A DNA stretch of 33,047 nucleotides, from positions 1-33,047 of the forward strand of contig NW_003314488.1 of assembly GCF_000143415.4 (NCBI RefSeq). Reading direction: 5' to 3'. Below, in pieces: positions 5,831 to 30,866 of this stretch (positions within the stretch are counted from its first letter, which is position 1; the number at the start of each line of letters is the position of its first letter). The stretch is from Selaginella moellendorffii (Eukaryota > Plantae > Lycopodiophyta). A program made the translations under genes and the position numbers. The notes beneath the pieces are model-generated. The model saw nothing but the letters and a program-made list of their open reading frames with translations. It was not told where the DNA came from and did not search any database.

Positions 5831-6210
5831 ACGAGATCTTTCTCGGGCTCAGTGTCGTAAAAAGCCTTAGTTATACCCATTTGCCTCATCTTGGCAAATG
5901 CTGGGATTACAGCTAGGCATTAGAAATTTACAAAGGCTTCAATGAAAAGAATACAATAAATTCCTTTTAGCATATGCCCTGCTTGGCATATCCTCTGGTC
6001 CAATACTCATCCTCAGTGCAATGTCTAAGGAATCAATGAGCGAGATTATGGATACAACATATGTTACTAACACTTGGTTTTTAACCAAAGCTGCTGAATT
6101 AAAAAATTACTAGAGCATCAGAACATTTTTATATATCAAATATGGAATTATATACTCTTCCATTATTAACTATAACCATTCCCACCGGATCAAGGGTAAA
6201 AAGTAAATAT

Positions 6211-6264
6211 TATGGCGTGCAATTCGTAAAAGGGTGAGTGTTACTATAGTAGATTTCACTCACA
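6211..6264 (+). repeat. Left terminal inverted repeat
   Basis: 26 bp perfect and 54 bp imperfect (7 mismatches) inverted match to 26860-26913. Confidence 0.95.
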
Positions 6265-6663
6265 ATACAGTGTTCATGTGGCAGTTTCTATTGGTTCGGC
6301 ATTAAATGTCATTTGGATTTGGCCGATGGGTCAATGATGTCCCTATAATATGAACAATGTGTTACACATAGATGCCACATATCATCAAGTTTGACCCCAT
6401 GACATGGGGATTCATCAGGTCATAGGGTTTAGGAGACGCTGCGGGGTGCTTTAGTGCTTTGTTATTCGGCATGTTTCTTGGTAGCAAATGTAGAAGGTAA
6501 TTTGGTTTGTTAGTGAGTGGTTTGAAATGTTTTTGTGGGCAGCGTTGGAAGTGGCTTTGATTTACTACTCGATTGTTCTCTATGGACTTTCAAGTTCCTA
6601 CCATGAGTATAGTTCCCTCCCTAGTTTACTTCAAATTTGTGTCATTGAAACTTTTTCTTCCAG

Positions 6664-8293: not shown

Positions 8294-8519
8294 GCTTTGG
8301 AAAAATTATACTTGGCCATACTTGGAGAAAATTGAGTGTTCTTTAGTGTACATTTCAAATTTAAATTCAATTTTTGATTTGTTCAATTTTAGGGTTCCCA
8401 CGTTTGGGATTAGGGTTTTCACCAAGTCCCACCCATATTAATTGTGCCTTGGATACGGGGTGATTTCATTTTATGACATGATTTTGTCGATGGTTCGTTC
8501 GTTCTTCCAATCGATTCGT

Positions 8520-10086
8520 GTCATCTAACTGGAGGCAAGGCTTCTAGTGCACACTCCCCCGATTGCAAGACCATCGCCCAAGTGAGAGTGCCACAGCTGT
8601 GATGGTGGGTAGCTTCTCCTCGATCAAGTTTGCATAACCAATCCTTTGTGGTTTCTAGGCTCGAAGCAAGAACGCCGCACGCCTCAACAGCAGTAGACAC
8701 TATGCAGGAAACACCTCGCGAGCACGCAGCCAAGCACTCGATGTTCCGCAATCGGTACAGCCAACAGTCCCGCGAGACACATGCCAGCCACTTGATTTTC
8801 CAAGCTCCGTAGCAGGGACATCAACTCCAACAACATCCCATCCACAGCTCCCAACTGCATTTGAGCAAGCAGAGCGCTGCCTAACATTGCATACATTGCA
8901 ACATATGCGGAACCTCTAGCATGTTTCATTCTCCTCGCCTTCCTTGGAAAGTAGCAGCCCGAGCATTCGAAATGAGCAAGTCCGGACACCTCATGCCCAC
9001 GGTGTTGTCCAATCTGGAACACTGCCACCAACACCAACTAGAGGACGTGCTCACGGAATCCCATATAGTGCCATTGCTACTAGCCCCGCAACTCCACCAA
9101 CCACTACAACTCTCGCAACTCCATCTACCGGTACAAGTGCCAGTACCTGGCCATCTACCTCCCGAAGCAACAAGCGGTCTAGCTTGGTAAGTTTTTCATT
9201 TGTGCCCATTTGTTTTTTCCATGTGTTTTTCTGCGTAGGGTGAGTTCACAATGCCTCCACACCAGCGAGCTTATAGTTCCCCATCAGCATTCCACAACTA
9301 CTCCCAAAGATCGACATCATCATCTAGTGGAGCTTCGACATCCAGATATGTTCAAGCTGACCCTCAAGGCGGGCTGCCATGTGAGCCACAGGTATAACAT
9401 GACCCCATGCACTCTTCATTTTTTTCTTCTTTAGATTTGTTTAACTCATTTTTGTTTCACTGTGCTAGACTCTCTCACCGCTTGTGGCTACAGTGCACAC
9501 CTATGCCGATAACAATCGGCAGTCCTTATGTTGTCGTCGTGGACGTCGTGGCAGTCGATCCAAAGTCATTGGTGGGATGTCGTCTACGACACCCTTGGTC
9601 CCCCGGCTGTTCACCACAGTTCTTGTCACCAAGTGGATTGCAATCCCAAAGACTTGGCATGTACACTTATATGGGCGAAAAAGAGAGCCATCTGTGAAGG
9701 TGACGGAACTTGACGAGCTGGCAGTGGACCTCCCAGAGTGTCTCATATGGGGTGGCTTATACTCTAGTATTCCTTTCCAGCCCGGCACAGCCCAACATGC
9801 GATTCTACTATCACTCCAAGCCTCAGGAATCCAACCTTCATCCATGACCAACCCAGGAGCATTTGTCCGGCGTGCAAGGCAGTCCAATGGTGGTGAGGCC
9901 CATGCCGAGTCTGCAAAATTTGGCCTCAGCTCTATCCGGCCTTGCTACTGGCCTCCTCAAACATCATGGGGAGCAATAGCAAACAAGGCCAATGGCAATC
10001 GGGCAACAGTTATATATTTATACAATGTTATGGAGTATTTTACTGACAAACATTGGCTAAGTTATCAAAAGCAGGCCCGAGCACTC
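8520..10086 (+). pseudogene. 5' part of the transposon's HECT-domain gene (S/T/P-rich N-terminus plus ORF 9484 onward)
   Basis: Coding-like blocks are separated by short GT-AG introns (~8605-8658, 9187-9238). The frame ...QARAL joins EEKDVRE at 17434 when the Gypsy and one CACTC are removed. The start is uncertain and frameshifts are present. Confidence 0.6.
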
Positions 10087-11741
10087 TGTAAGCGACTAAA
10101 TTTTCCATTCTACTTTAGTCACTTAACCACACCTCCAACCACTTGGAGGAGTCTCATTTGCAACCTCCATATGTCCAATTCAAGACTTGGGGCTTGCTAG
10201 CCCCGAGAATGGCATCCATGCCACTCAACCTTTGCACTTGGTCCAAGTGCTTCACGTGTCCAATCCCATGACCGACACCCCAAGGCACCACCGATATACG
10301 AGCCCGTTACGCTAGGCCACGCTCATTCACCTTGGTCACATCGGTGGTCTAACACCACCTGCATTGCAATCCCATCTCTCCAAGACTGGGCCATCCGTCC
10401 ATGAGTGATCATCCCAGATCCACTCCTTAGCATCCTTAGGATGCCCACTGACAAGGGGAATAGCCTTCCCCAATATCCCTCTGTCAGTCCCCACTAAGTC
10501 CCTTTTGCCCTGGCCGTGTTGCCAACACTGCCACTGGATCGGGCCATGGCCGACATAGTCCCACGGTCCTCTGGGACTTCCTCACCACACGACTGTGTCC
10601 TTGGTCACTACCCCAGAGGATTGCTTCTCTTCCTTTCCACAGTTTGGGCCTTTGGGACAACATTTTGGAACACCGTGGCCTTACGCGAGCCACCTGGGTA
10701 CTCTCCCTGCCTTCCGCCCTTGGGTGCTCTAGCCATAGGCTTAGAGCAAGGTTCCGTTGAGCCACGCCTGGTATCCAAGTAGGTAGTGCCACCCACACTT
10801 GGATTGGGAGCATCGGCCAGTCGATCTCCCGGGGGAACTAGAGCCGGCTCTTGAACACTTCACCAAGCTACCCCGCTTGTCGGTCCATATTCACTCTAGT
10901 CTTGGACTTCCCAGTGGTCAGTTCATCACCCAACACTGGGTCTGGCCTTCCTGGGCCAAACTGGCCTTTCCTGGCCAAACTAGCTCCACTGCAGTCCTCC
11001 CCCTTACTATACTTTTGGAGCTCACCAAACCCCCCAGCGTCTGGGAGATGAATGCTTTGGGCTTTCACCCTCTTAGACTCGAACTCAGACTCGGACTTGG
11101 ACTCGGACTCGGACTCGGACTCGGGCTCGGTCTCGGCCTCCGCCTTAGTGTCGGTCTCAGTCCCGGTCTCGGTCTCGACCTCGGACTCCACCTCAAGTCC
11201 ATCTCGGACTCCATCTCGGACTCCGTCTCGGTCCATCTCGGACTCCATGTCGGACTCCACTTCGGACTCATCTCGGACTCCATCTCGGACTCCACCTCGG
11301 ACTCCGTCTCGGTCCATCTCGGACTCCACCTCGGACTCCACCTCGGACTCCATCTCGGACTCCGTCTCGGTCCATCTCGAACTCCACCTCGGACTCCACC
11401 TCGGACTCCATCTCGGACTCCGTCTCGGTCCATCTCGGACTCCATCTCGGACTCCATCTCGGACTCCATCTCGGACTCCGTCTCGGTCCATCTCGGACTC
11501 CATCTCGGACTCTTCCATGTGTCATGTGTTGGTCCTTTTGGGTCCCTTTTTGGAGCCTTGCTTATTGCTCGCTTCGTGCTTGTTCCTCAAGCACTTTGTT
11601 GGGAGTTCCACTCCCGCTCTCGACCTTTCAAGTCGGAGCTTTTAGTCCAAACGTGTTACGCTCATTTGGCTTTCGCTTCGGCCACTACCACGTGGCACCC
11701 TTCTGGCTCCACTTTGGGGCCTAGGGATTTTGTGTCTCACA
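10087..11741 (-). repeat. 3' LTR of Gypsy element (1655 bp)
   Basis: Direct repeat of 15816-17428, adjacent to the PPT. Confidence 0.95.
11073..11512. repeat. Tandem array of CTCGGA / CTCCATCTCGGA / CTCCGTCTCGGTCCAT units in the 3' LTR
   Basis: Hexamer-based low-complexity array, directly visible. Confidence 0.97.
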
Positions 11742-14700
11742 ACTCCACCACCCATAGATGAAGTTCGATGTCCTCATCGAACGGTAAACCCTTTTATAAA
11801 GTAATACCCACATGTATTATCATTTCCATCCTTGGCCCCCGGCCAATATTTGTCTATGGTTTGACACCGAAGGCTCACCATGCCTTGTCCATCCTCTAAG
11901 GAGCATAGTCTCTCCAACATAGAAACTCACTTGACCCCCTAGGGTGGTTTACTCCCTTTTATTGGTTCAGTTCTCGCTAAACCCGTTAGAAACACCCTCT
12001 CTAACTCAATTCCACTACTCATTCTCGAGTAATCTTAGATTCCATTGACATAACCTTTGCATTTTGGAACTTTTAATTTTGATTTCTCCGAGTCAATTTT
12101 CTAGGTGTCTCCGACACCTTACGTTGCACATGGTGCAACTCCACTTCCCTATCCTAGGAAGTTCTTTACTTGAGGGTACTATCATCCTCTCTTCGATATC
12201 GTGCCACCTTTGGGCACTAAGTTCCAGTTATCATAATTGGTGCTAGGGCTGCCCACGGCCCTATTATTTGGCTACCTTACCGCTCCCCCCTTTGGAGCAT
12301 TCACTTTCGCCAAATCGGAGCGGTTAGGAATCCATCCTTGGGGAAACATTGCCTTTCCCACAATCCGTTAGCACCCAACACATTAGTGTTCTCGGCTTAA
12401 CTTTGCCATTTGGATTCTTTTCCATGATTCCCATGGCTCTTTTCTTAGCCACTAGTCTTTTGCTCCTATCCTTGATTGTTGCACCCAGCAACATAGGATC
12501 GCTCCCTCCATTTTCGAGGTTTCCTTTCAATTCCATAGCAAACACTTTGCTTTTGTCAAGTCTAGAGGGTGTTCACCCCTAGTATGTCTCTTTAACATTT
12601 CCGGCTGTGGGCTCTATCCACGGCTTAACTTTTGAGACCCTCCCTTGGATCTCTTATAGAGACTACTTTCTTCGGATTTACTATGCCATAGCAGTGACAT
12701 AGCTCATTTCCCATAGGTGCTCTTTCCACTTGGTCACCTTGACCAAGCCACACCATTATCAATAGTTCAAATCAACACTTTGAATTAGGAATCATATCCC
12801 TTAACCCAAACAAAGACCTTGTCCTTGTTTAGCCACAAGATCACCTAGTGATCTCATCTTGACCCCTTAATAGGTCTACCAATAGGAACTAGGTCTTCCA
12901 GACCCTTCTAAGTTGTTGACTATGACCCCGAGGGCATCCCCCACACTTGGCGGTGCACCCAAGCCAGCCCTTCCGGCCAAGGATCCATAGCAACTGAGAC
13001 TGGGTGTCCCCATCTCATTCACCACGTCCTTGGTGCCTTTTGCACCAAAGTGTTCAAGTTAGATATGCCGAACTTTCACTCTAAGCAATCTAACCGTGCA
13101 TCACGACTCCGGGGCATCCCCCGCTTGGCAGTGTGCCCAAGCCAATCTCCTCATTGAGAGTCCATGACCACCAAAATATGAATGTCCTCATATTCCAAAC
13201 CATCACCACGCCTTAGTGATTTGAGACTTGAACCCAAGCACTAGAGGGTCGGGACTCGAACCCAACCTCCATATATGCATCTACGGACGGCATCACCCTA
13301 GATGCCTGGCGTGACTCCCCACGCCGGTGCACCAACTTATACTTAAAGCGCGCTATAGATCGCAGCTTAGGAACCTAGTTCCTCCACACTGCCAAGTCCT
13401 CTCACTTGACAAGTCTGTGATCATGCATGGACTCCTCCATGCTTGGCCCCATAGCCCACCCTTTTTGAAGTTATCACCTTCAACTAGGGTATTTGTTCCC
13501 CATGACTTGCCAATCTCGCTTGGCAAGTCCTCCGACCACTGTAACATGGTCCCTGCATAAGCATGAAAGTCCTTGACCATCGACTTTCGTTCAAAGCCCT
13601 CTCTTTGAACACTCGGGAACTACTTCCCTAACCTTGATAGCCTTGCCTCATGGCAAGCTTCAAGACCACGCTTCTGCTGTGCCATTCTGATTTCGCGCCT
13701 TTCATGAACCATTTACACTTGGCCTTTTTAGGTACTAAGCTACCTAGAATCATCTTTGGGAACTTTGAAGGAACTCTGTCCCTTAGCTTGCTAAAGCTTC
13801 CTTTTTCGCAAGCTTTATAGTTGCCATATAGTCTAACATGGACAATTCCATATTTTAGACTCTCCATGGCATCACAGTTGCTAGCAACAACATCCTCGAG
13901 CACCCTTTTAATTCTTCACTCCCAACTTGCATAACCCCCATTGGATATGCCCTTCGATTTCTATGGTTCAGTTCCATCCCAATACTACTTGCCTTTTGGC
14001 CCCATATGTTTCCTTTGGTTATTCTCCTCCAGATTAGGAGGATAGCTTTGCACATTTTACTATGCCTTAGCAAGTATTCTTAGGGATGAACCTACCTGAT
14101 AGCCTAGGGAGTGGTTCCTCAATCTTGGGCATGCTCACCTTATAATCCCACACACCGGGATTAACGTTGCTACTTATGGGCCTTTACATGCCCATCACTA
14201 GCCTTGCCAAACTTCCATTTTTGGCTTTGTCCAATTCGGGTAGACAGTCTTCTCCTATCTCCATAACCTCGGACATTTGGATAGCACCTTTTATCCATCA
14301 TTCGCTAGGGACTTAGTCCCTTGAGCCTTACCTATTGCCCTTGCGACACGAAACACCACCTTTTGGTGTTCTAGAATGTTTGGGTGTCCCAATGATGGCC
14401 TCCTGACCATGAGCATTCCCGTTTACGACATTGACTTACTATATCGTAACATAAGCAATTTATCCTCCGTAAGGGTATATCTAACTTCCTTATGCCATTA
14501 AAAAGTCTTCGGTAGCTACCCTCTACCCGTTTAACCAATTATCTTGCACCTCTTGCTTAGTTGCCTCATAGTTGTCAAGTCCTACAACTCATTACTGATG
14601 CTTCCACACCTCTATCATTGTTTTGGTCACCACACTCTACCACATGCCTTCTACCTTAGGCTATGCCATTCCCATTTCCGTTGGGATTCCTTTAGCAAGG

Positions 14701-15800
14701 GGTTCTTATGAACCCACCAACATAACCTCAAGGTATCATACCTTGGCACATTTGGTGTCTCCACACCATTGGCCCCACGAGCCTATCCTTATGACACTAC
14801 TTATTAGTGTCTAGGTCTTTGCCAAGACCAATATAGTTGTGCCTCATGCTAACTATCCATTAGCACCGCACCATAGTGTTTGTCCCCAACTCTGGGCCAA
14901 AGTTTCTTTCTTTTGGGAACATCTTTCCCACAACTTTAGTATGGCACATTCTGCCATCAATGAGATATTTCCTGTTCTCATACTTGGATCTTATGATCCT
15001 CCCCATACCTCATGGGGCACCATACACTTCAGTCTAAATGCTTCAATCAATCCCTTAGGACCATTCCCTGACCCCACTTGAGTCATCTAGCATTTTTGGA
15101 CTTCGCTAAACTAACGACCCATAAGGTCCTATTTTCGAGGTGCCAGCTCACTCAAATACAACTTCATGTATTCATGTCCTACTCATAAGGACCATCTTGC
15201 AAATGTTACTCCAACACTTCATTATTTCCCGTTCTCTGTGGGCTGCCTTTGCCCCTTAGGAGTATCCGTCCCTATGATGAGAATGCCGACTCATCCTTTG
15301 AGCACACCCCTAACTCCTTGGGTTCATTCCAGCATTTACAAAAGGTAGCCCCAGCTACCATTTCGAGGGCTCTTGCCCTCATCCGTACTTGACCTCTCAT
15401 GGTCATCAATTCAGGTCTCAAATTCATGAGCACCAGCCTCAAGTACGTGCGGATTATCTTGTGACTCCTTTATTGTTTTGGAGTCTGGATCTTTCCCGTG
15501 ATCCCAATTATAGTTGTTTACCACAACTACCTTAGTTAGTTTGCTGAGTCAAACGCTCATCCGGACCACATCCTCAACTCTTTGAGGGAAACCTTATACC
15601 GTTCCCAAGATCCCGAAGTCGTTCCCTTACTGGCCCTTTTCCATCCACCACATCGCACACAAGTTCACACATGAACTTGAGTGGAGAGCCATGTCCTCTC
15701 GACATGCTACTCCTCGAGGATAGGTCCATATCTAGGACCTTCCAATTTCAATACCAGTGGTGATATACTTGGCCACCAATAAGAGTCGGACTAAGGAACA

Positions 15801-15812
15801 GCTCCGATACCA
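15801..15812 (-). promoter_or_regulatory. Primer binding site (initiator Met tRNA) of the Gypsy element
   Basis: TGGTATCGGAGC on the minus strand, 3 nt from the 5' LTR, one mismatch to TGGTATCAGAGC. Confidence 0.88.
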
Positions 15813-15815
15813 AGT

Positions 15816-17428
15816 TGTAAGCGACTAAATTTTCCATTCTACTTTAGTCACTTAACCACATCTCCAACCACTTGGAGGAGTCTCATTTGCAACCTCCATA
15901 CGTCCAATTCAGGACTTGGGGCTTGCTAGCCCCGAGAATGACATCCATGCCACTCAACCTTTGCACTTGGTCTAAGTGTTTCACGTGTCCAATCCCATGA
16001 CCGACACCCCAAGGCACCACTGATATATGAGCCTGTTACGCTAAGCCACGCTCATTCACCTTGGTCACATCGGTGGTCTAACACCACCTGCATTGCAATC
16101 CCGTCTTTCCAAGACTGGGCCATCCGTCCATGAGTGATCATCCCAGATCCACTCCTTAGCATCCTTAGGATGCCCACCGACAAGGGGAATAGCCTTCCCC
16201 AATATCCCTCTGTCAGTCCCCACTAAGTCCCTTTTTGCCCCTGGCCGTGTTTGCCAACACTGCCACTGGATCGAGGCCCATAGGCCCGACCACTAAGTCC
16301 CACGATCCTCTGGGACTTCCTCACCACACGACTGTGTCCTTGGTCACTACCCTAGAGGACTGCTCCTCTTCCTTTCCATAGTCTGGGCCTTTGGGACAAC
16401 ATTTCAGAACACCGTGGCCTTACGCGAGCCACCTGGGTACTCTCCCCGCCTTCCGCCCTTGGGTGCTCTAGCCATGGGCTTAGAGCAAGGTTCCGTTGAG
16501 CCACGCCTGGTATCCAAGTAGGTAGTGCCACCCACACTTGGACTGGGAGCATCAGCCAGTCGATCTCCCGGGGGAACTAGAGCCAACTCTTGAACACTTC
16601 ACCAAGCTACCCTGTTTGTCGGTCCGTATTCACTCTAGTCTTGGACTTCCCAGTGGTCAGTTCATCACCCAACACTGGGTCTGGCCTTCCTGGGCCAAAC
16701 TGGCCTTTCCTGGCCAAATTGGCTCCACTGCAGTCCTCCCCCTTCCTATACTTTTGGAGCTCACCAAACCCCTCAGGGTTTGGGAGACGAATGCTTTGGG
16801 CTTTCACCCTCTCAGACTCGAACTCAGACTCGGACTCAGACTCGGACTCGGACTCGGACTCGGACTCGGGCTCGGTCTTGGCCTCCGCCTCGGTGTCGGT
16901 CTCGGTCCCGGTCTCGGTCTCGACCTCGGACTCCATCTCGGGTCCATCTCGGACTCCATCTCGGACTCCGTCTCGGTCCATCTCAGACTCCATCTCGGAC
17001 TCCGTCTCGGTCCATCTCGGACTCCATCTCGGACTCCGTCTCGGTCCATCTCGGACTCCATGTCGGACTCCATCTCGGACTCCACTTCGGACTCATCACG
17101 GACTCCATCTCGGACTCCATCTCGGACTCCACCTCGGACTCCACCTCGGACTCCATCTCGGACTCCGTCTCAGTCCATCTCGGACTCCATCTCGGACTCT
17201 TCCACGTGTCATGTGTTAGTCCTTTTGGGTCCCTTTTTGGAGCCTCGCTTATTGCTCGCTTCGTGGTTGTTCCTCGAGCACTTTGTTGGGAGTTCCACTC
17301 CCGCTCTCGAGCTTTCAAGTCGGAGCTTTTAGTCTAAACGTGTTACGCTCGTTTGGCTTTCGTTTCAGCCACTACCACGTGGCACCCTTCCTGCTCCACT
17401 TTGGGACCTAGGGATTTTGTGTTTCACA
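15816..17428 (-). repeat. 5' LTR of Gypsy element (1613 bp)
   Basis: Direct repeat of 10087-11741, adjacent to the PBS. Confidence 0.95.
16811..17199. repeat. Tandem CTCGGA-based array in the 5' LTR
   Basis: Same units as 11073-11512, with a different number and order. Confidence 0.97.
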
Positions 17429-18039
17429 CACTCGAGGAGAAGGATGTTCGTGAACGTAAGTCATTTTTTTTTTAAGTTCCCTCCTCACAAATATATGTTG
17501 TGGTCTTTGCAGTTGTAGCTGCTACAAATACCTTGACTGCAAATGATGATCCAAGGCCAGCCACGCAGGAACCAAACCCTTGCAAGAATAATGAAGAAGA
17601 AGACTCTGCGGATGAAGAGGACATTCTTCCATTACCGGAAGAAACTCTCCCCACACAAGACAACATGGACATTAGCAGAGTCGAAGAACAAGGTGATGGT
17701 GGGGATGAACCGCACCAAGGATCTCCAGAGACATCCTTGTCACCAGAGATAGTGGCTCCAGGCCATGCAGCTGGTAAAAAGCACTAACATAAATGAATAT
17801 TTTCTTCATTTTCTAATTTCTGAGTGCAGATAGGCCAATGGTAGTGTATGACAGTGATGGTAGAGGCCTTGAAGACCATGGTGTGCCTCCACCCCCCTTT
17901 CTAGAGGGAAGTAGCTCCACTCCGTTTACGCTTATAGAGTTGCTTGACAACTTTTCTACAGTAGAGTAAGATAATTGAAAATTTTGCTATTCAAAATTGA
18001 ACTAATGTTTGCATGTAGATTGTTAGAACAGCAACAAAG
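17429..18039 (+). pseudogene. Middle exons of the HECT-domain gene (acidic, disordered linker)
   Basis: Exons LEEKDVRE / VAATNTLTAND...PGHAA / RPMVVYDSD...LDNFSTVE / LLEQQ are joined by phase-consistent short GT-AG introns. The frame continues as QKWIDATNAF after the Copia is removed. Confidence 0.75.
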
Positions 18040-18189
18040 TCTAACGAAAGGTGAAACCGTGTGATGGTGCTCAAGATCCGTCATAGCATATATGGAATGG
18101 AAAATGTACATATGTGTGACATGGTGAACCGGTGAAGACTCGTGTCTCTCCACGTGGACTAGCCATGTGGCACAGGGCCACTCTCAACA
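18040..18189 (-). repeat. Copia 3' LTR (150 bp)
   Basis: Identical to 22430-22579 by eye. Confidence 0.97.
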
Positions 18190-21100
18190 CTCCCACTGGC
18201 ACTGTGGCCATCAGGAGTGATGCTCATCAGTGGAGAAAGTCCCAGCCCTTCGCGATGGACTTGAAATCGATCTCGGGGTAGTGCTTTTGTGAAGATATCT
18301 GCAACCTGAGTGGTCGTGTCGCAGTAGATCAGCTCAATTGTGCCATCTTCCACTTTCTCACGAACGAAATGATGATGAATCCCAAAGTGTTTGGTGCGTG
18401 AATGAAAGCGAGGATTGACCGCTAACGCAATGCAGCTTTGATTGTCACAGAAGAGGCGAGTGGGAGTCTTCACACTCACACCAAGGTTAGAAAGTAGTGA
18501 GCGTAACCACATACCTTCTTTGGTAGCTTGTGAGGCTGCCAAATATTCTGCTTCCGTACTAGAGGTTGCCACTGTACTTTGCTTCCTGCTGCACCACGAG
18601 ACTGTCGCACTGCCCAGGGAAAACGAATAGCCAGAGGTGGACTTGCGTGTGTCACAGTCTCCCCCAAAATCAGCATCACAGTACCCCGTGAGGGTAAGCG
18701 CTTTTCCCTGGTAGCACAATCCAAGGTAAGTAGTACCTCGAAGGTACCTGAAGATGCGTTTCACCGCTGCCCAATGTTGAGATCCAGGATTAGCCAGGAA
18801 TTGGCTAACTTTGCTCACGGCAAAAGAAATATCTGGGCGCGTACAAACAGCTGGATACATGAGACTGCCAACAGCTTGTCTGTAAGGGATGGAGTCCATG
18901 GCTCTCTTGTCGTCCTCTGTCTCAGGAGACATGGCTTGTGAAAGCTGGCAGCCTAGTTCCATTGGTGTCGCCACTGGATTAGAGCTCGTCATAGAAAACC
19001 TGGCCAGCATATCTTCTATATACTTGGCTTGGTGAAGATAGATAGTGCATTGAGAGCGATCACGCACAAGTTCCATGCCAAGAAAGTAGGAAGCCGAGCC
19101 AAGAGTTTTCATCTCAAATTGGCTGCAAAGATCTCACTTAACCTGGAGAAACATTAAGCGATGATTATGGATGACAAGAGTATCATCAACATAAAGAGCG
19201 ATGATCACAAATGATTCACCCTCCACCCGAATATAAAGATTCGGGTCTGCCTCGCTACAGGAAAAGCCCACACTTAGTATAAAATCGTCAAAGCGTTTGT
19301 ACCAAGATCTGGGTGCTTGTTTCAAGCCGTAGACAGCTTTCTTGAGAAGCCAGAGATGATCCTCTTTTCCAGCGGCTAGAAATCCTTCTGGCTGTGCCAT
19401 ATAGATTTCTTCTTCAAGCGCGCCATAAAGAAACGCCGTGGTCACATCCATCTGTTCCAGATCAAAGTCTCCCACCGCAGCAAAATTAATCAAGGAACGA
19501 AGAGTAGAATGCTTAACCACTGGAGCGAAGGTGTCGTTGTAGTCAAGTCCAGGAACATGCGAGCATCCTTTCGCCACCAATCGCGCCTTGTAGCGAACCG
19601 AGCCATCAGGATTAAGCTTCAGAGCATACACCCACATGCTCTTGATAATCTGGCGATCGGAAGGCACAGTTGGAACAAGAACATGTGTCTCGTTCTTTTG
19701 CTGTGAAGCAATCTCGGCTTCCATTGCTACACGCCAGTAAGACGCTTCCTGCGAGGCCATGGCTTCTCCATAGGTCCTCGGAACAGTAGGAGTAGCTGCA
19801 CGAGAGGAGACCATTGTCTCGATGAGACGCTCAGTAGGCCGCCTTGTGCGGATCGATCTGCGTAGAGGATCTGGAGGAGGTGGCGGGGTTGGTGGTGTTG
19901 GAGTAGAAGCGGGCATGGGTTGTTGCGTAGGGACTGTTTGAAGCGGCACAGTGATCGTGCCAACAGTCAACTGATCTTGTTCCGCTTCAACGTCATTTTC
20001 TTCGGTCAAGGTAGGTCTAGAACCTTGACTAGAAGGAAGAAAAGAATTCTCGTTGAAAACCACATCTCTGCTCAGGATCTCCTGCTTCGTGATTGGATTC
20101 CAGAGACGATAGGCTTTGTGATCGAAGCCCACAAACACAGCCTTCTGGCTCTTGGGGTCCAATTTCTTGCGCATTCCATCAGGGATGTGTGCCCACGCTT
20201 CACACCCGAATATTCTCAGATGCGTAACTGTAGGTTTCTTGCCACTCCATGCTTCTTCAGGAGTGATGCCAGCAAGGGCAGAGGTGGGGAGCCGGTTCTG
20301 GAGATAGTTCGCCGTCAAGACAGCGTGAAACCAGAAGCTGCGAGGCAAACCACTGGAAAGTAGCATTGCCCGAGCACTCTCCACTAGTGTGCGATTCTTG
20401 CGCTCAGCTACGCCATTCTGTTGTGGAGTCTCTCGCGTTGTAAGTTCTCGCACAATCCCTCCTTGCTCACACAGCTGGTTGAAAGCATTAGAAGTGAATT
20501 CGCCTCCACCATCACTTCTCAATCGCTTGAGCATTTTCCCAGTTTGTGTTTCTCCCATATCCTTGAAAGTCTGGAAGTAGTGTAACGATTGGGATTTGCG
20601 AGCCATAGGGTAGATCATAGTGCGACGACTGTAGTCATCAATGAAACTGATAAAGTATTGGATACCTCCCACTGCTGTGGTGGCCATCGGGCCACACACA
20701 TCAGTGTGTACAAGTTCCATGAGCTCTGTAGCTCGAGATGCTCCAGTCTTGGGGAAAGGTTGGCGAGTAGATTTTCCTAGCTGACAGCCCTGGCAAAATG
20801 GAAGAACGGCTCTTGGGTCCAGGTCTAGACCTTCAACCATCTGCTCGCGTGCGAGCTGCTTGATTCTATCAGCACTAGGATGCCCCAGGCGTGCGTGCCA
20901 AAGCTCCAGTGAGTGACTGGTCGTTGTCTTTTGTGCGTGTAGGCCCAGACTCCGTCCAGCAAGATCTGGCAGCATGGTAAGGCGGTAGAGGTCACGCCGT
21001 CCAGGCCGGGACGCTGTGAGGATGGCTCCTGTGGTCGAGATCAGCTGGAATTGGCGAGGTGTAATGGCGAACTGATACCCATCCTCAGCAAATTGTCCCA

Positions 21101-22259
21101 CAGAGAACAAATTAGCACATAAACCAGGAATATAAAGAACCTCGTGGATCTTTACGACTATTCCTTGTGGTAAAGTGAACTTGATGGTTCCAATTCCTTT
21201 CACAGCAAGCTGCTGGGCATTGCCAACGATGACATACTCCTCTGTGGCTGTAGGATCATAGGCTTCAAAGTACTTATCACTGTTGAACATATGGTCTGTA
21301 GCAGCAGAATCCAGGTAGATGCACTCTGTAGACAGTGCTGCCACTGCCATAGCTCGTGACAAGATGAAGGCGTGTACCACCTTTTTCTTTGCATTGTTCC
21401 TTACAGGCTTGAGAGATGGATTTTTCACCCAGCATTGAGCTTCGTCATGGCCTTTCTTGTTGCAATGAGAACACTTGGGCTTCTTGGATGAAGAGGCTCC
21501 TTGTTTCCCTTTGTTCACTGTTTCTTTCCTGAGAGAAGAGTAGAATGCAACGGCCTCTGATCCTGTTGTTGCTCTTCGTCTCAGATCATCGTCCTGGAGG
21601 CTACTGATCACGCCATTCAGGGTTAGAGGAGTTCCAGTGGTAGTGAGGCTACGTATGAGAGGATCAAAGGATGGAGGAAGTGTGACGAGCACCAGCTCTG
21701 CTTCTTCTTCATCCTCTATCTTCGCTCCCACATCCTTAAGATCATCTAAGATTGTTCTCGCTGCAGCAAGATGATCCTTGAGGTCGTCCCCTTCAGCCAT
21801 CACCAGTGCATGAAGCTGCTTCCGTAAAAAGATGCGATGGGATGTTGAAGGGATCTGGTAAGTCTGCTTCATGGCCTCCCACGCTTCCTTTGCACTCTTG
21901 CACCGTCCAATGCAATGGAATTCTCGCCCCTCCAGCGCTGCATGGAATTTGCCCAAAGCTCTCCGGTCCTTCTTGCGATACTTCGCAGTTTCATCCACTG
22001 TAGCTGTATCTGGAAGTGTCTCAGTTCCTGTGGTGATGTCCCAGAGGCCTCGTTCATCCATATAGGATTCGAATTTTGTCTTCCAGAAGCGCCAGTTCCT
22101 CCCATCAAATTTTGGTGGATTTGCGTCCACTGAAACGATATCCGCTGTAGGCACAGTCGAATTTGTGATGGGAGGGGAAATAGGTGGTGGATTTGGAGGC
22201 AGATTTGTAGGAACAGTGGCTGCCATGGGTGCTGACACCCAATCCCACCACTCGTTCAA
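18159..22259 (-). CDS. Copia Gag-Pol polyprotein, broken by a single in-frame TGA at 19134-19136
   Basis: Motifs: gag PKFDGRNWRFWK, zinc knuckle CSHCNKKGHDEAQC, protease YLDSAATDH, GAG-pre-integrase LWHARLGH, integrase HTDVCGP/RSDGGGEF/AERKNR, RT YKARLVAKG and YVDD, RNase H YCDADF/EAEY/CDNQS/ADIFTKAL. ORFs 19134-22259 and 18159-19112 are in the same frame (QVK*DLCSQFEMK). Confidence 0.96.
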
Positions 22260-22417
22260 GTCTAGGTCCAGGTTCTTAGTCGTCCAGTGCCTCTTGCAAG
22301 GCCTGGAGCGCTTGGATTAGGGCATGCCTCTGTCTACGTAGACGGAGGCTCCAATTCACCCTAGCAAGTGTCGTCCTGATCCTATGGTTTCGTATTCTTC
22401 TCGCTCTCCCAGGCATT

Positions 22418-22429
22418 GCTCTGATACCA
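22418..22429 (-). promoter_or_regulatory. Copia primer binding site (initiator Met tRNA)
   Basis: TGGTATCAGAGC directly after the 5' LTR. Confidence 0.95.
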
Positions 22430-22579
22430 TCTAACGAAAGGTGAAACCGTGTGATGGTGCTCAAGATCCGTCATAGCATATATGGAATGGAAAATGTACA
22501 TATGTGTGACATGGTGAACCGGTGAAGACTCGTGTCTCTCCACGTGGACTAGCCATGTGGCACAGGGCCACTCTCAACA
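22430..22579 (-). repeat. Copia 5' LTR (150 bp)
   Basis: Identical to 18040-18189. Confidence 0.97.
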
Positions 22580-24955
22580 CAAAAATGGATTGATGCCACC
22601 AATGCATTTAATGAAGCTGTTCAGTTAACCACTCAGGATAGTGCCAATTTCATCATGCTGCAGATTGAGGAGGTTTCTGCCTTACAGGATGCCACCACAA
22701 CCCTTGAGGTGAGGGCACAGGGGGATGCTGAAGTTCTCTCACAGGTGCAGTGGCTGAAACACAAGCTTCTTGGTTGCTTTGGCGTGGAGAGCACAAGTGA
22801 CGAGGAAATGCTAGATGCTATTGTTAGACACCCTGAATTCCATTGGGCTGGCGGTGAAATATTTCTGCGGCGCGTGCTTTTCAACCAAGCCATGCCTCAT
22901 TGGCAAGATTGGGAGAGTCTTCTTCTTAAGCTTGGCCTTTCAGAAGCACAATACGAGGATGTGTTTTATGACAACACAATCCAACAACTCCTTGCTGAAG
23001 TAAGTATTAATGTGCCTCCTTCAATTCTTGAGTCCACAATAGCATGGTTCATTGAGAAGAGGTACGTGTATCTATTTCTTAGCACTTAGTACCATCTTAT
23101 GGTTTTGTGCAGGGACCTACGTAAGAATTGGGTGGCTGCACAACAATTGAGAAAACTATTTGACACTACTGAAACACTGTATTGTAAGTTCTCTTGTTTT
23201 TGCATCGAGAAGGCCATGCTTCGGCCATACAGACTTGCTCGTACACGTTTGAGGCCGTCTCGCATTCTGGTAAGCAATGGATTGCCTATGAATTGGAGTT
23301 ACTTCACTTGTCCTTCTAGATTGCACCAAACAATGAATTCAATTGTTTCCAATTCACCTTCAATCACCGAATTACAAAGTGGTCTATGCGTCTGAGATTG
23401 GGGGAGCTTTGGTGTGGGAGGAATCCACAATAGATGTGGGTGGGCCATATGCAAACTATGCGGAGATGAATATGTCCTCAGTGTAATCTCCGTACACGTT
23501 TGGCTGGTACAGGCTCGTACACGTTTGAGGCCGTCTCGCATTCTGGTAAGCAATGGATTGCCTATGAATTGGAGTTACTTCACTTGTCCTTCTAGATTGC
23601 ACCAAACAATGAATTCAGTTGTTTCCAATTCACCTCCGCAGGTGAATTGGTCCTCAGTGGACGCGGAGATGCGGAGATGCGGAGATGAATATGTCCTCAG
23701 TGTAATCTCCGCACACCGAATTACAAAGTGGTCTATGCGTCTGAGATTGGGGGAGCTTTGGTGTGGGAGGAATCCACAATAGATGTGGGTGGGCCATATG
23801 CAAAAGCCATTAGGGAGGCTGTTCGCCAGATTCTAGGATCGGTAAGTCTAATTTTCACTTGGCTCACTAAAGTAATTTTGTGTTACAGACGCGTGGACTG
23901 TTTGTGTTTAGGGAAGGAACCACATATTGGCATCCCAGGATGCTAGTGCATTCTAGGACGTTGCGACAAGAAGAGCGGGATGTGGTAAGTTAAGTTTAAA
24001 GCATAAGTTTTATATACTCCTCACTTTTATATGCACAGGCTACCTTTGTGGGATGGTTGCTATTCCAAGCGTTCGAATGTAATACACATGTTTCTCGCGG
24101 GTGTACAATTGCAACATTGGCAATTGCAGTTGGAGAGGTTCCAAACGAAGATGACCGACGACTTGCCCGAGGAGGACTATATGAGATGGACCTCAAGGCA
24201 TGCGCACCGCATATCTGGAATGCACTCAACCAATTGCGAGGTGCATCAAGCTTAAAGGAGGAGGGTGATCAGTGCAAGTCTATGGATTCCATCCTAGAGA
24301 ACCCTGCAATTACTGACTACAATGCAGTGCTTGAGTCTAGACTCACCGAACTTGGTGAAGGTTATGAGAATGCTGTGGAGGCATGTGTGGCTGCGGTGGT
24401 TTGGCATTACCTATTCATCGAGCCAAACGTAGTGGGAGACTTACTCTGAGATGGCTTCCAACACTCAATGTGCATGGAAGCTCGTCAGAGGCCTTACAAG
24501 AGTCCAGCATTGCTAGGTGGGCTTTCACTCATTGGGACATATGCTTTGTTACAAGTCTTCCGGGTAAGGACGATCATTCCTCCCGCGGAGTTCATCAACT
24601 GCCTGATCTTTGATCAGGACTTTGGAGAAAACTTCCACATCTGGATTGTAGACATCATTCGAGGTAACTATTTACTTTCACAAACAACTAAAACTCTTGT
24701 ATGTTTGAACATTTTATAAATATGAGCCCGAAAGAGTTATCCAAGTTCCATCACTTTGCGGTTGATTCTCCAGAGTTCCGACCGGGAGAGCTTATTTGGA
24801 TCCAAGTTGAGAGACAGCGTACATCATCTACTCAATTTCCCAGGTTCTCCACATGCACACGAGAAGTTTTCTTCCCTTTAACATACCCGTCAAAGGAGTG
24901 GACCAAAATCCAAAGAGCTTGTATGGATTGGGCTGATGTTGTGGAAGTAATGTAG
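22580..24955 (+). pseudogene. 3' part of the transposon-borne gene with a divergent C-terminal HECT E3 ubiquitin ligase domain
   Basis: HECT-like motifs in the right order: EESTIDVGGPYAKAIRE (GExxxDxGG box, ~23770), FVGWLLFQA, DLKACAPHIWNALNQL, L*DGF, MSPKELSKFHHFAVDS and FPRFSTCTREVFFPLTYPSKE (LPxAxTCxxxLxLPxYxS; Cys codon 24854-24856). Lesions are a frameshift near 23765, a stop at 24447 and a probable AG>AA acceptor at 24719. Confidence 0.82.
23237..23803 (+). repeat. Rearranged local tandem duplication inside the HECT gene
   Basis: 23237-~23495 repeats blocks of 23513-23803 almost identically but in shuffled order. Confidence 0.93.
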
Positions 24956-25076
24956 ACACTTTCATAATAAAAATAGATAATTGTCTTGAAATATGTTTCA
25001 CACTTTGAAAGAGACTCTTTCCAGTTCATTGGCGAAGTTAAAGGTAAGAATATTCAAAATATTCCACAAATGCCCA

Positions 25077-25667
25077 TTATAGGCATTTGCGGCCCTTAGT
25101 ACCCTTTTGGCTTATGCTTGTCTCACCAAGGGTAATCACTATAGCTTCCAAAGCAACTCCCAATTTAGGTTCTGGGTCAAAACTATCGAGCTTGGGTGCT
25201 ACATGATGCCCATCCTCGCTTGAGGAACTCTCAACCTGTTTGGTAGAACCCAAATCACCCTCTGGGTCTGTGAACTCATCCTCACTTGCATCTCGAGCAG
25301 TAACATATCCCTCGCTGTCGCTTTCTTCAGCAGGACCTTTCCCCTCGGTGATTGGCACAAGATTAGAAGTAGTCTTGGGTTGCCTTGTCGGAGGGATTGT
25401 CGAGCCTTGAGAGGAGGAGGCATCATATAGAATCCTCGGTCCTGTCCCCTGTTGGATCCATTGTTGTGCCTCAAAGAAGTCATAAAATCCTCTCCAGTTT
25501 GCCATGCCAGGAGGAAACCCAGAAACCTCAAACATTGCAAAAGGGTTAGACCATATAGGAAACTATTACAAATCTACTCTTACCAAAGTGAGCACGAGCT
25601 TCCAACCCCTGAAAACTCCAGTTCTTCGGCCGCAGCGCACGGCATACATTGGATAGTTTTGCCCCAT
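25077..25667 (-). CDS. Two-exon protein: N-terminal RNase H1 hybrid-binding (Cauli_VI/viroplasmin) domain plus acidic tail, ~177 aa
   Basis: Exon 1 (25667-25584) is MGQNYPMYAVRCGRRTGVFRGWKLVLTL. A 57 nt GT-AG intron follows (25583-25527). Exon 2 (25526-25077) begins VSGFPPGMANWRGFYDFFEAQQWI. This matches the YAVRxGRxxGIYxxWxxxxxxVxGFP...KxFxxxxEAxxF pattern. The frame is intact. Confidence 0.8.
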
Positions 25668-25695
25668 GCTTGGAAACCCTTTTTACAAATTTCAA

Positions 25696-25968
25696 AATTT
25701 GAAACGGTTATGATTGGAAAATATTGTAAGTGTCCATTGTCATTGCTCTTTTCACCTAAATGTTATTACATGCAATTGCAACTCCCATATTCTCAAATCT
25801 CCTTCAGCATGTTCCTCTTGAGAGAACTCCAGGTCCAATTTGAAACAATTATAATTGGAAAATGTTGAAAGTGTCTATTGTTATCCTGAATGTTACTACA
25901 TGCAATTGCAACTTCCACATTCTCAAATCTCCTTTAGCATGCTCCTCTTGAGAGAACTCTAGGTCCAA
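25696..25968. repeat. Two diverged tandem units of ~135-140 bp
   Basis: 25696-25836 and 25837-25968 share AATTTGAAAC...ACATGCAATTGCAACT...CCTCTTGAGAGAACT. Confidence 0.9.
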
Positions 25969-26859
25969 ACATCAACACTATGCACTTTTGCATAGTACAC
26001 AATTGAAATATGAGCCCCACCAATTCATCGAATTGGTTAGACTTCAACCTACTTTTGAGTCATATGCAAATTTTCTAAGCATCATAGTACAAAACTCAAG
26101 TGTTGAGAGAGCTACACTAGAAATCAATTGTAACGAAAGATAAACTCAATGGGATCTATTAAAGACATGACTCCAGATAGTATATATCCATGGCTTTGCA
26201 ATGGAGCTAGATGGAGTTCACTTACGTTTGCTATGAACACTATGTTAAAAGAGGTGTGCCCAGGTGTAACTCAATTTCCAACATTTTCCAGCTATGAGAG
26301 CCTAGGAGTTCTTCGCGTCCATGGTGAATGCACCTCAAGAATCACAGTGCAAGACAGAGGAAGCAAGAGGATTCAATGATTGCCTAGACACGGCAGCGGG
26401 TAACAATGGAAGCATCGATGATTGCGAGTAGCACAGCGGCGGTCGGCAATGTGGGGAGGACATGGCGATGGCTGTCGATGACGATCAAGGCTGCCACACT
26501 CCCAAATTCTAGATGGAGTTCACTTACACTTGCTATGACACTGTTAAAAAAAGTGTGCCAAAAAAGGATAATTTAATTCTTTTGCCATGAGCGCCAAGAG
26601 CAAGATGTGAGAACATAGTGCTCTAGATAAGGTAGTATGGTATGCAATTTAGTTGATTGTCATTTGGTTTGCAACATTAACAACTTGCTCGAATGCATGG
26701 GATGAATGGGTCTATGGGCCATGAATGGCTCCATTCCATATATAGCATGGGTCATTGCTATGGGCATGATGCCCCATCCGGGGCATAAGGATTGGATATT
26801 TGTAAAATATTCTATGCCTGTGTTTTTTTCACTCGGACCAATAACAGGCACACACGTGG

Positions 26860-26913
26860 TGTGAGTGAAATCCACCGTTGTAAAATCCACCCTTTTACGA
26901 ATTGCACGCCATA
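26860..26913 (-). repeat. Right terminal inverted repeat
   Basis: Reverse complement of 6211-6264. Confidence 0.95.
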
Positions 26914-27109
26914 AATATACCTGATATGAAACAATTCGTCTTCAGTGCATTCCTGTATCCCTATCCACCACCTCATAATTTGATGATGTCCCTGCATAAG
27001 CATGTGCTACTTGGAAAGCAATGAATGTAAAACATATGTGAGCTCCTCCAATAGCAAAGCTAACTAGCATAGACAACTGAAACAAATTGTTAAGCAATTA
27101 TCCATAAAT

Positions 27110-30590: not shown

Positions 30591-30866
30591 GCAGTTTCAG
30601 TAAAAATTCAACGTAAACCATCAATATGTTCACCTGAGAGCAATAGTGTTGTTGGTCAATCCCATACATGTATTGAAGTAGGGATGATGAGAGAAGAGCA
30701 GGCTCATTTTAGGGCAAACGTGGCCTAGATGAAATGCAATTTGTATGGATCATAGTGGCACGATCCAGGGCCTCAATACAACGCAGGTCACCTTGAGAGA
30801 GCAGTTGAGGATGAGAGGGAGACCTAGATACTCAAAAGGAATATAAGAGGGAGACTTCCAATGGAC

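What the first reader, a model, noticed from the sequence alone, without database searches (positions are those of the whole stretch)
25077..25667. Stand-alone RNase H1 hybrid-binding domain gene, the only intact gene of the transposon
Seen: a 57 nt intron splits the motif YAVRCGRRTGVFRGW...VSGFP...RGF..FFEAQQWI, followed by an acidic low-complexity tail and no RNase H catalytic domain. It is convergent with the HECT gene (stops ~120 bp apart), and its frame is intact. Knowledge: this domain binds RNA:DNA hybrids and dsRNA in RNase H1 and caulimovirus P6, the latter a silencing suppressor. Inference: it could target R-loops or sequester dsRNA for the element.
Basis: partly seen in the sequence, partly recalled or inferred. 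Interest (0 to 1): 0.78.

Follow-up and report, generated by a model that had tools for sequence, protein, structure and literature searches.

The report
Transposon-borne RNA:DNA hybrid-binding domain gene
A small two-exon gene in a dead spikemoss jumping gene (GingerRoot/IS3EU type) encodes only the RNA:DNA-hybrid-binding module of RNase H1 plus an acidic tail; the domain is real and every copy examined carries the gene, but here it is silent in the RNA runs sampled, and its frame may well be intact by chance.

Summary
On the minus strand, exon 1 (25667-25584), a 57-nt GT..AG intron (25583-25527) and exon 2 (25526-25077) give a 177-aa protein. Its first ~52 residues match Pfam Cauli_VI / RNase H1 N-terminal domain (35.8 bits, cutoff 21). 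The model superposes on the human RNase H1 hybrid-binding domain (3BSU, rmsd 1.1 A). There is no RNase H catalytic domain, and the tail is acidic and Ser/Thr/Pro-rich.

The genome is Selaginella moellendorffii. The gene lies inside an ~8.6-kb multi-copy IS3EU/GingerRoot DNA transposon (6211-26913, TATGG..CCATA ends, 5-bp target duplication). The element also carries a DDE transposase and a divergent HECT-like gene.

In this copy the transposase has a 2-nt frameshift and two LTR retrotransposons split the HECT-like gene.

That is not evidence of function:
- Only 2 of 5 copies are open.
- Substitutions fall equally on all codon positions and are mostly transitions.
- Three RNA-seq runs gave zero reads over the gene.

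R-loop or dsRNA binding for the element is plausible but untested. I found no published transposon with this cargo. The scan has already noted this family, including the small gene, on other pieces of this genome.

The parts
6211..26913 (+). Whole IS3EU/GingerRoot-type DNA transposon copy. It is about 8.8 kb of element DNA plus two nested LTR retrotransposons.
   Evidence: 85-94% identical over 6201-10086, 17429-18039 and 22579-26913 to four other loci of S. moellendorffii. The ends read TATGGCGTGC... on both strands.
6206..6210 (.). Left copy of the 5-bp target-site duplication, AATAT.
   Evidence: Copy L001 has AAAAA on both sides.
26914..26918 (.). Right copy of the 5-bp target-site duplication, AATAT.
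   Evidence: RNA reads from other copies diverge exactly after 26913 (table 7).
6211..6298 (+). Left terminal inverted repeat. It is perfect for 26 nt, 83% over 60 nt, and fades by about 90 nt.
26826..26913 (-). Right terminal inverted repeat.
6573..8293 (+). Multi-exon DDE transposase gene (HTH plus rve/rva_4 core), broken by a 2-nt deletion near 7716.
   Evidence: Exon pieces hit HTH_17, rve and rva_4 PF24764. Public models of the paralogues carry PF24764. The frameshift is shown.
8520..24955 (+). HECT-like gene of the element, split by two LTR retrotransposons and convergent with the hybrid-binding gene.
   Evidence: The last exon, 24692-24952, gives a weak HECT C-lobe match (12.2 bits, E 0.14, profile 219-288 of 306). 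The uninterrupted paralogues are called as 733-787 aa genes.
10087..17428 (.). Nested LTR retrotransposon with about 1.6-kb LTRs 95% alike, TG..CA ends and target duplication CACTC.
18040..22580 (-). Nested Ty1/copia element with identical 151-bp LTRs.
   Evidence: Pfam finds gag, integrase and RVT_2 in ORF 19134-22259.
25584..25667 (-). Exon 1 of the hybrid-binding gene: start codon, strands beta1-beta2 and most of helix 1.
25527..25583 (-). 57-nt intron, GTAAGA..TTTGAG. The GT and the TTTGAG acceptor are kept in all five copies.
25077..25526 (-). Exon 2: strand beta3 and helix 2 of the domain, then a 121-residue acidic tail and the stop codon (25079-25077).
25696..25968 (.). Two tandem units of about 130 bp just upstream of the gene. 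They are present in all copies and may be promoter repeats.
   Evidence: (family D11).

Best explanation
This is a cargo (accessory) gene of an IS3EU/GingerRoot cut-and-paste DNA transposon family of Selaginella moellendorffii. It encodes a 177-aa protein: an N-terminal RNase H1-type hybrid-binding domain (residues ~7-52, beta-beta-alpha-beta-alpha) followed by an acidic, probably disordered tail, with no nuclease. Shown: the domain, its fold, its place inside the inverted repeats of every copy examined, and that the common ancestor of the copies had the open frame. Also shown: this copy sits in a dead element (transposase frameshifted, HECT-like gene split), no RNA reads were found in the three runs sampled, and the copies are decaying neutrally, so its open frame can be explained by chance. 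Inferred: in the active ancestor the protein bound RNA:DNA hybrids or dsRNA without cutting them. It could have shielded the element's own R-loops or double-stranded transcripts from RNase H or Dicer-type processing. The convergent genes, with stops 121 bp apart, would readily give overlapping transcripts. Alternatively it could have guided the element's other proteins to such structures.
For: - Pfam Cauli_VI 35.8 bits against a cutoff of 21, covering the full profile only when the 57-nt intron is removed.
- PDB sequence search: the best hits are the human (3BSU, E 0.002) and yeast (1QHK) RNase H1 hybrid-binding domains.
- AlphaFold model: pLDDT 84.5, strand and helix order E-E-H-E-H. Foldseek top hits are 3BSU (TM 0.87 by target, rmsd 1.1 A) and 1QHK.
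- All family-invariant positions are kept: Y8, A9, V10, G13, G17, G31, F42, A48.
- Of the three human residues mutated in the non-binding W43A/K59A/K60A protein (PMC6868509), W is kept (W22), K59 is R40 and K60 is G41. Many relatives also read Y-K/R-G-F there.
- The gene is present at the same place in all five copies, 88-96% identical, and inside the TATGG..CCATA inverted repeats.
- The inactivating lesions differ between copies, and the majority sequence of the domain part is open, so the ancestor was open.
- In the exhaustive search the nearest single-domain match outside the family was only 45% identical (42.6 bits), and no hit exceeded 53%, so a recent capture from an annotated host gene is unlikely.
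- IS3EU elements with extra genes are documented in fungi (PMC12730594).
Against: - No purifying selection is detectable. Variable sites per codon position are 37/31/40, and 14/13/14 inside the domain, with transitions far outnumbering transversions.
- The flanking non-coding DNA differs less between the window and L001 (5 of 277) than the coding part does (25 of 534).
- Only 2 of 5 copies are open.
- There were zero RNA-seq reads over 23700-26200 in three runs, about 9.2 million records read for each run listed. The splice is therefore unverified, and public models of two paralogues use another acceptor.
- No orthologous gene was found outside this family, so conservation across transposon lineages could not be shown.
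- GingerRoot elements are known to pick up host gene fragments with their introns (PMC6839031).
Confidence: 0.55

Rival explanations
1. It is a transduplicated host fragment. An ancestor of this family picked up the 5' part of a cellular RNase H1 gene (hybrid-binding domain, an intron, the linker) at the DNA level, as Pack-type GingerRoot elements do. The piece was simply copied along and never served the element.
For: - 22 of 77 intact GingerRoot elements of S. lepidophylla carry host gene fragments that keep introns (PMC6839031).
- The nearest relative that shares the rare 2-residue insertion in the loop (GFPxGMxNxRxF) is a complete RNase H1 with a catalytic domain (P0026).
- An N-terminal domain followed by a long Ser/Pro/acidic stretch resembles domain plus linker of RNase H1.
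- The substitution pattern is neutral and no RNA was seen.
Against: - Nothing from Selaginella outside this family was recognised among the 70 hits of the exhaustive search, although only 20 of them were traced to a source. The best outside identity is 53% or less, whereas reported captures are 79-98% identical to the parent.
- The frame has its own ATG just after a stop and runs 177 codons to a stop. It was open in the ancestor of all copies.
- In S. lepidophylla, fragment capture usually goes with loss of the transposase. Here the full three-gene set is kept in the copies examined.
Confidence: 0.3
2. It is an ordinary host gene, or a domesticated one, that merely lies next to transposon debris.
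For: Its frame is open while the two neighbouring transposon genes are broken.
Against: - It lies 1.25 kb inside the right inverted repeat and travels with the element to at least four other loci with different flanks and target duplications.
- Three of those copies are pseudogenes.
- No expression was seen.
Confidence: 0.03
3. It is a remnant of an endogenous caulimovirid P6 (inclusion body / transactivator) gene.
For: The Pfam family is named after caulimovirus gene VI, and two metagenomic hits are labelled 'Caulimovirus viroplasmin' by their source.
Against: - No other caulimovirid domain is in the gene or its element. The only reverse transcriptase nearby belongs to the nested copia element.
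- The hits that could be traced to a source were RNase H proteins of oomycetes, a marine protist transcriptome, a yeast-like fungus and a bacterium, and metagenome proteins.
- The domain sits at the N-terminus, as in RNase H1.
Confidence: 0.02

Closest known systems
Hybrid-binding domain of eukaryotic RNase H1 (human 3BSU, yeast 1QHK; Pfam PF01693 Cauli_VI)
   Same: Same fold (beta-beta-alpha-beta-alpha), N-terminal position and all family-invariant residues. The Trp equivalent to human W43 and a basic residue at K59 are kept.
   Different: No catalytic RNase H domain follows. There is a 2-residue insertion in the loop before beta3, and K60 is Gly. The gene is carried by a transposon rather than being a housekeeping gene.
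GingerRoot / IS3EU DNA transposons (Cerbin et al. 2019, PMC6839031; Kojima, PMC10045372 and PMC12730594)
   Same: TA..TA ends of the TAYGG..CCRTA type, inverted repeats of several tens of bp, an rve-like DDE transposase without an HHCC motif, a size of about 8.6 kb, a lycophyte host and a dearth of expression.
   Different: The target duplication is 5 bp in the two copies with both ends, against the 6 bp reported. The papers I could read describe no hybrid-binding or HECT-like gene in these elements, and S. moellendorffii is not named in the main text of PMC6839031.
Fungal IS3EU elements with accessory genes (TET/JBP dioxygenase, alpha-kinase; PMC12730594)
   Same: Same superfamily. They are multi-gene elements in which extra genes lie between or beside the transposase, some in the opposite orientation, and are proposed to counter host silencing.
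   Different: The cargo is different (a nucleic-acid-binding domain and a HECT-like protein) and the host is a plant.
Caulimovirus P6 (transactivator/viroplasmin)
   Same: It contains the same ~44-residue domain. From my own knowledge, P6 is a suppressor of RNA silencing.
   Different: P6 is a large multi-domain viral protein. Here the domain stands alone with a disordered tail and is closer to cellular RNase H1.
Stand-alone Cauli_VI proteins of microbes
   Same: Short proteins with one or two hybrid-binding domains and no nuclease (P0051, P0049, P0014, P0029). One of them, P0022, sits on a bacterial mobile element beside ArdC, RadC, YqaJ and resolvase genes.
   Different: Identity is 53% or less, the hosts are unrelated, and none is linked to an IS3EU-type transposase.

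Membership tests
RNase H1 N-terminal hybrid-binding domain (Pfam PF01693 Cauli_VI) | Profile score above the curated gathering cutoff over the whole domain | tested here: met
   35.8 bits against 21, E 9.6e-9, profile positions 2-44 of 44.
RNase H1 N-terminal hybrid-binding domain (Pfam PF01693 Cauli_VI) | Three-stranded sheet with two helices (beta-beta-alpha-beta-alpha) that superposes on solved domains | tested here: met
   The model has pLDDT 84.5 with E7-12, E17-20, H22-29, E38-42, H45-55. 3BSU matches at TM 0.87 by target and rmsd 1.1 A, and 1QHK is second. The model was built from an alignment of family members, so this is not fully independent.
RNase H1 N-terminal hybrid-binding domain (Pfam PF01693 Cauli_VI) | Conserved contact residues (human W43, K59, K60; aromatic at F58) | tested here: inconclusive
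   W22 matches W43, W39 matches F58 and R40 matches K59, but G41 stands at K60. Gly at that position is common among relatives.
RNase H1 N-terminal hybrid-binding domain (Pfam PF01693 Cauli_VI) | Binds RNA:DNA hybrid (and dsRNA) in vitro | not testable with these tools
   Needs purified protein and gel-shift assays.
RNase H1 (the enzyme) | RNase H catalytic domain with DEDD residues after the linker | tested here: not met
   Exon 2 (149 aa) has no Pfam hit at E up to 1. BLASTP against the complete RNase H1 P0026 aligns only the domain half.
IS3EU/GingerRoot DNA transposon (the element that carries the gene) | Termini TA..TA of the TAYGG..CCRTA type, with terminal inverted repeats | tested here: met
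   TATGGCGTGC... at 6211 (+) and 26913 (-), 26 nt perfect and 83% over 60 nt. The definition comes from PMC12730594 and PMC6839031.
IS3EU/GingerRoot DNA transposon (the element that carries the gene) | 6-bp target-site duplication | tested here: not met
   5 bp in both copies with two ends: AATAT in the window and AAAAA in L001. No 6-bp reading fits.
IS3EU/GingerRoot DNA transposon (the element that carries the gene) | rve-related DDE transposase of the IS3/IS481-like type | tested here: met
   An exon piece hits rva_4 PF24764 at 26.2 bits, and another hits rve weakly. The paralogues' public models carry PF24764. The motifs HMD, RSDNAPEH and RIEHLW are visible.
IS3EU/GingerRoot DNA transposon (the element that carries the gene) | Multiple dispersed copies with different flanks | tested here: met
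   Five loci on four scaffolds, with different flanks and duplications for the window and L001. L002 and L003 share a flank, so they are a segmental duplicate.
Caulimovirus P6 | The domain embedded in a large viral protein within a caulimovirid genome | tested here: not met
   The protein is 177 aa, there are no viral neighbours, and the traced matches are cellular RNase H proteins and metagenome proteins.

The most novel reading that the evidence does not exclude
The GingerRoot family carried a two-part counter-silencing module. The stand-alone hybrid-binding protein recognised R-loops or double-stranded RNA made at the element, for example from the convergent, overlapping transcripts or from RNA-directed DNA methylation scaffolds. 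Through its acidic tail it brought the element's own HECT-like ubiquitin ligase to the host proteins assembled there. This would be a transposon-encoded analogue of viral silencing suppressors.
Probability: 0.1. Interest if true: 0.8.

Novelty: new variant of a known kind. Interest (0 to 1): 0.45.

Why it matters
Cut-and-paste transposons are usually thought to need only a transposase. A family that kept a nuclease-free RNA:DNA-hybrid/dsRNA-binding protein (and a HECT-like protein) through its spread would point to transposon-encoded handling of R-loops or silencing RNAs in an early-diverging vascular plant. It would also add a natural stand-alone hybrid-binding domain to the few known. For annotation, the public models of this gene family are mis-spliced and hide the domain. 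On present evidence, however, the copies are dead and function is only inferred.

Tried and rejected
- RNA support for the splice: three raw RNA-seq runs gave zero depth over the gene. The junction could therefore be neither supported nor refuted.
- Selection tests: codon-position counts, branch-wise N/S counts and Nei-Gojobori dN/dS on five copies. The omega values of 0.26-0.86 are inflated towards 'constraint' by the strong transition bias, and the flanks are less diverged than the coding part. I read this as neutral decay with low power.
- A brute-force rebuild of the public transposase model from its coordinates gave more than 50 equally valid exon chains and was abandoned. Stop-to-stop segments and a direct DNA alignment settled the frameshift instead.
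- The ESM Atlas search with exon 2 gave no usable hit.
- The context of the metagenomic relative P0049 was uninformative.
- The Pfam scan of the HECT-like gene pieces gave only a weak C-lobe hit. I keep the label 'HECT-like' and do not rely on it.
- A possible relic of the RNase H first strand in the tail (IVITLGETSISQKG) was considered and dropped, because nothing aligns.
- The host RNase H1 of Selaginella could not be fetched with the tools at hand, so the capture hypothesis was tested only indirectly.
- No complex prediction was run. The HECT-like protein has no single reference, and binding is only a speculation.
Exon 2 was used by reference.

Full report
**What is in the sequence**

On the minus strand an ATG at 25667 follows an in-frame TAA 15 nt upstream.
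- Exon 1 (25667-25584) encodes 28 residues.
- It is followed by GTAAGA...TTTGAG, a 57-nt intron (25583-25527) that contains an in-frame stop.
- Exon 2 (25526-25077) continues in frame for 149 codons to a stop.

Joined, the first 63 residues hit Pfam PF01693 (Cauli_VI, RNase H1 N-terminal domain) at 35.8 bits against a cutoff of 21. The match covers profile positions 2-44 of 44. Exon 2 alone hits nothing, so there is no RNase H catalytic domain.

The match needs both exons in exactly this register, so chance can be set aside and the 57-nt intron is the ancestral splice. The tail is acidic and rich in Ser, Thr, Pro and Gly, with net charge -9. The convergent ORF ends at 24955, 121 bp from this gene's stop.

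**Is the domain sound?**

- A sequence search of the PDB puts the human RNase H1 hybrid-binding domain first (3BSU, E 0.002), with full-length human RNase H1 and the yeast N-terminal domain (1QHK) also among the top four hits.
- An exhaustive HMMER search of 1.84 billion representatives found 70 proteins at E up to 0.001.
- Aligned with 35 of these, the window protein keeps every invariant or nearly invariant position: Y8, A9, V10, G13, G17, G31, F42 and A48.
- An AlphaFold model from that alignment has pLDDT 84.5 and the order strand-strand-helix-strand-helix.
- Foldseek returns 3BSU at TM 0.87 (normalised by target) and rmsd 1.1 A, then 1QHK, and nothing else of note.

Three human residues are mutated in the standard non-binding protein, W43A/K59A/K60A (PMC6868509). 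Here the Trp is kept (W22), K59 is Arg (R40) and K60 is Gly (G41). Several relatives share the Y/F-K/R-G-F pattern. A 2-residue insertion before strand 3 is shared only with P0026, a complete RNase H1 from a marine-protist transcriptome.

**Where the gene lives**

A word search with exon 2 found only four proteins, all hypothetical proteins of Selaginella moellendorffii, 70-95% identical. I fetched their loci.

Window 6201-10086, 17429-18039 and 22579-26913 are 85-94% identical to them. This is an ~8.6-kb repeat unit, interrupted here by two LTR retrotransposons.

- **Ends.** The unit starts and ends with TATGGCGTGCAATTCGTAAAAGGGTG in inverted orientation, at 6211 and 26913. The repeat is perfect for 26 nt and 83% identical over 60 nt.
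- **Target duplication.** AATAT flanks the window copy on both sides, and AAAAA flanks L001.
- **Transposase.** Exon pieces of the first gene hit HTH, rve and rva_4 (PF24764). The public models of the paralogues carry PF24764.
- **Literature.** The papers describe exactly this kind of element. IS3EU has TA..TA ends, TAYGG..CCRTA (PMC10045372; PMC12730594). GingerRoot was discovered in Selaginella lepidophylla, measures 3.9-12.9 kb and averages about 8.6-8.9 kb (PMC6839031).
- **Mismatch.** The one mismatch is the 5-bp rather than 6-bp duplication.

RNA reads from other copies break off exactly after 26913, which independently marks the end of the element.

The hybrid-binding gene lies 1.25 kb inside the right repeat in all five copies. 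It is therefore cargo of the element, not a host gene.

**State of this copy**

- The transposase has a 2-nt deletion relative to L001 and L002, between ...FESMED and IGILDVSNPW in its core exon.
- The large convergent gene is cut by two insertions. One is an LTR element at 10087-17428 (TG..CA ends, duplication CACTC). The other is a copia element at 18040-22580.
- The last exon of that large gene gives only a weak HECT C-lobe match.

**Does the open frame mean function?**

I find no sign that it does.
- **Lesions.** In the five-copy alignment the window and L001 are open. L002 has TGG>TGA in exon 1. L003 has a 1-nt insertion and a CAA>TAA. L004 has another CAA>TAA plus 2- and 18-nt deletions.
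- **Ancestor.** The lesions differ between copies, so the ancestor was open.
- **Codon positions.** Variable sites are spread evenly: 37, 31 and 40 overall, and 14, 13 and 14 within the domain.
- **Mutation type.** Transitions outnumber transversions 95 to 13 in the exons, which I take (from general knowledge) to be the deamination signature of methylated repeats.
- **dN/dS.** Nei-Gojobori omega values are 0.26-0.86. They are biased downward by this transition excess.
- **Flanks.** The window and L001 differ less in non-coding flanks (5 of 277) than in coding sites (25 of 534).
- **Expectation.** By my rough estimate, two open copies of five is about what neutral decay of a 534-nt frame at this divergence would leave.

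**Expression**

Three raw RNA-seq runs of the same species label gave zero depth from 23700 to 26200 at 95% likeness. About 9.2 million records were read for each run listed. This agrees with the dearth of GingerRoot expression reported for S. lepidophylla (section title in PMC6839031).

The splice junction is thus unverified by RNA. Public models of P0001 and P0004 use a CAG acceptor, at 25449 in window coordinates, which removes strand 3 and helix 2. The L002 model (P0002) reads exon 1 in another frame, because that copy has a stop.

**Origin**

Outside the family, no hit is more than 53% identical, and the strongest single-domain match (P0026, 42.6 bits) is 45% identical. Twenty of the 70 hits were traced to a source. 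They are oomycete multi-domain RNase H proteins, a protist RNase H1, a yeast-like fungus, a bacterium and metagenome proteins.

Reported GingerRoot captures are 79-98% identical to their parents. A recent capture from an annotated host gene therefore looks unlikely. An old capture of the 5' part of an RNase H1 gene cannot be excluded, and I could not retrieve the host RNase H1 to compare intron positions.

**How it most likely worked**

Shown: a nuclease-free hybrid-binding domain with an acidic tail, carried by the element together with a transposase and a HECT-like protein.

Inferred from what the domain does in RNase H1: it binds RNA:DNA hybrids, and less well dsRNA. Without a nuclease it would occupy or shield such duplexes.

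The two cargo genes converge with 121 bp between their stops, so their transcripts probably overlap. The element itself would then make double-stranded RNA and R-loops. My preferred reading is that the protein masks these from host processing or marks them for the element's other proteins. Its confidence rests on analogy only.

The main rival is passive, functionless cargo.

**Novelty and prior notes**

I found no paper that describes a hybrid-binding domain gene in any transposon. Fungal IS3EU elements with other accessory genes are known.

I identified the family as IS3EU/GingerRoot from the sequence and the papers. Only afterwards did I read the scan's notes, which say the same for other copies in this genome and mention the small gene. 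This report adds:
- the gene-level anatomy;
- the fold;
- the copy-by-copy lesions;
- the neutral substitution pattern;
- the lack of RNA;
- the transposase frameshift.

Noticed in passing
window 26203-26508: A ~306-bp segment is present in the window and L001 copies but missing from L002, L003 and L004. RNA-seq reads lie on 26207-26533 at 95-99% and run on into unrelated sequence, with a 'goes back 301' joint. It looks like a piece of an expressed, tandemly repeated sequence from elsewhere (a captured fragment or a small nested element), 540-840 bp upstream of the hybrid-binding gene.
   Followed up: partly
window 746-2813 and 30864-33047: Inverted repeats of more than 2 kb, 97-99% complementary, bracket the whole region. 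PPR-like paralogues lie at 4838-5656 and 28918-29842 as direct repeats, 80-90% alike. This is probably a segmental rearrangement around the transposon, not its own ends.
   Followed up: no
window 10087-17428; L003 13619-20587: The same LTR retrotransposon family (1.6-kb LTRs full of 12-nt tandem repeats) sits in the HECT-like gene of two different copies. The two insertions are 255 bp apart and in opposite orientation, so they are independent hits in the same small target.
   Followed up: partly
window 18040-22580: A copia element has 100% identical 151-bp LTRs, yet its polyprotein is split into two ORFs (19134-22259 and 18159-19112) within the reverse transcriptase. The insertion is very young but already broken.
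   Followed up: no
L002 816 and L003 6017 (both on GL377568.1): Two copies share the same left flank (…AAACAAGC|TA.GGC) in inverted orientation. They arose by segmental duplication rather than transposition, so copy counts overstate transposition events.
   Followed up: partly
window 25696-25968: Two tandem ~130-bp units (92% alike) lie directly upstream of the hybrid-binding gene and are conserved in all copies. They may be promoter or enhancer repeats. The public model P0002 starts its first exon inside them.
   Followed up: no
L006 4990-5307 (also L007, L008, L009): A 105-aa stand-alone Cauli_VI protein (P0022) recurs on about 29 contigs of bacterial mobile DNA. Its neighbours include MazE, a resolvase, ISL3 transposase pieces, a UvrD-type helicase, ArdC, YqaJ and RadC genes. 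Nuclease-free hybrid-binding proteins thus also ride on prokaryotic mobile elements.
   Followed up: no
run X4 (organism B), pieces on window 24489-26793: A run filed under another organism label holds contigs 96-100% identical to parts of this element (table 8). The family, or the same species, is present under a second label.
   Followed up: no
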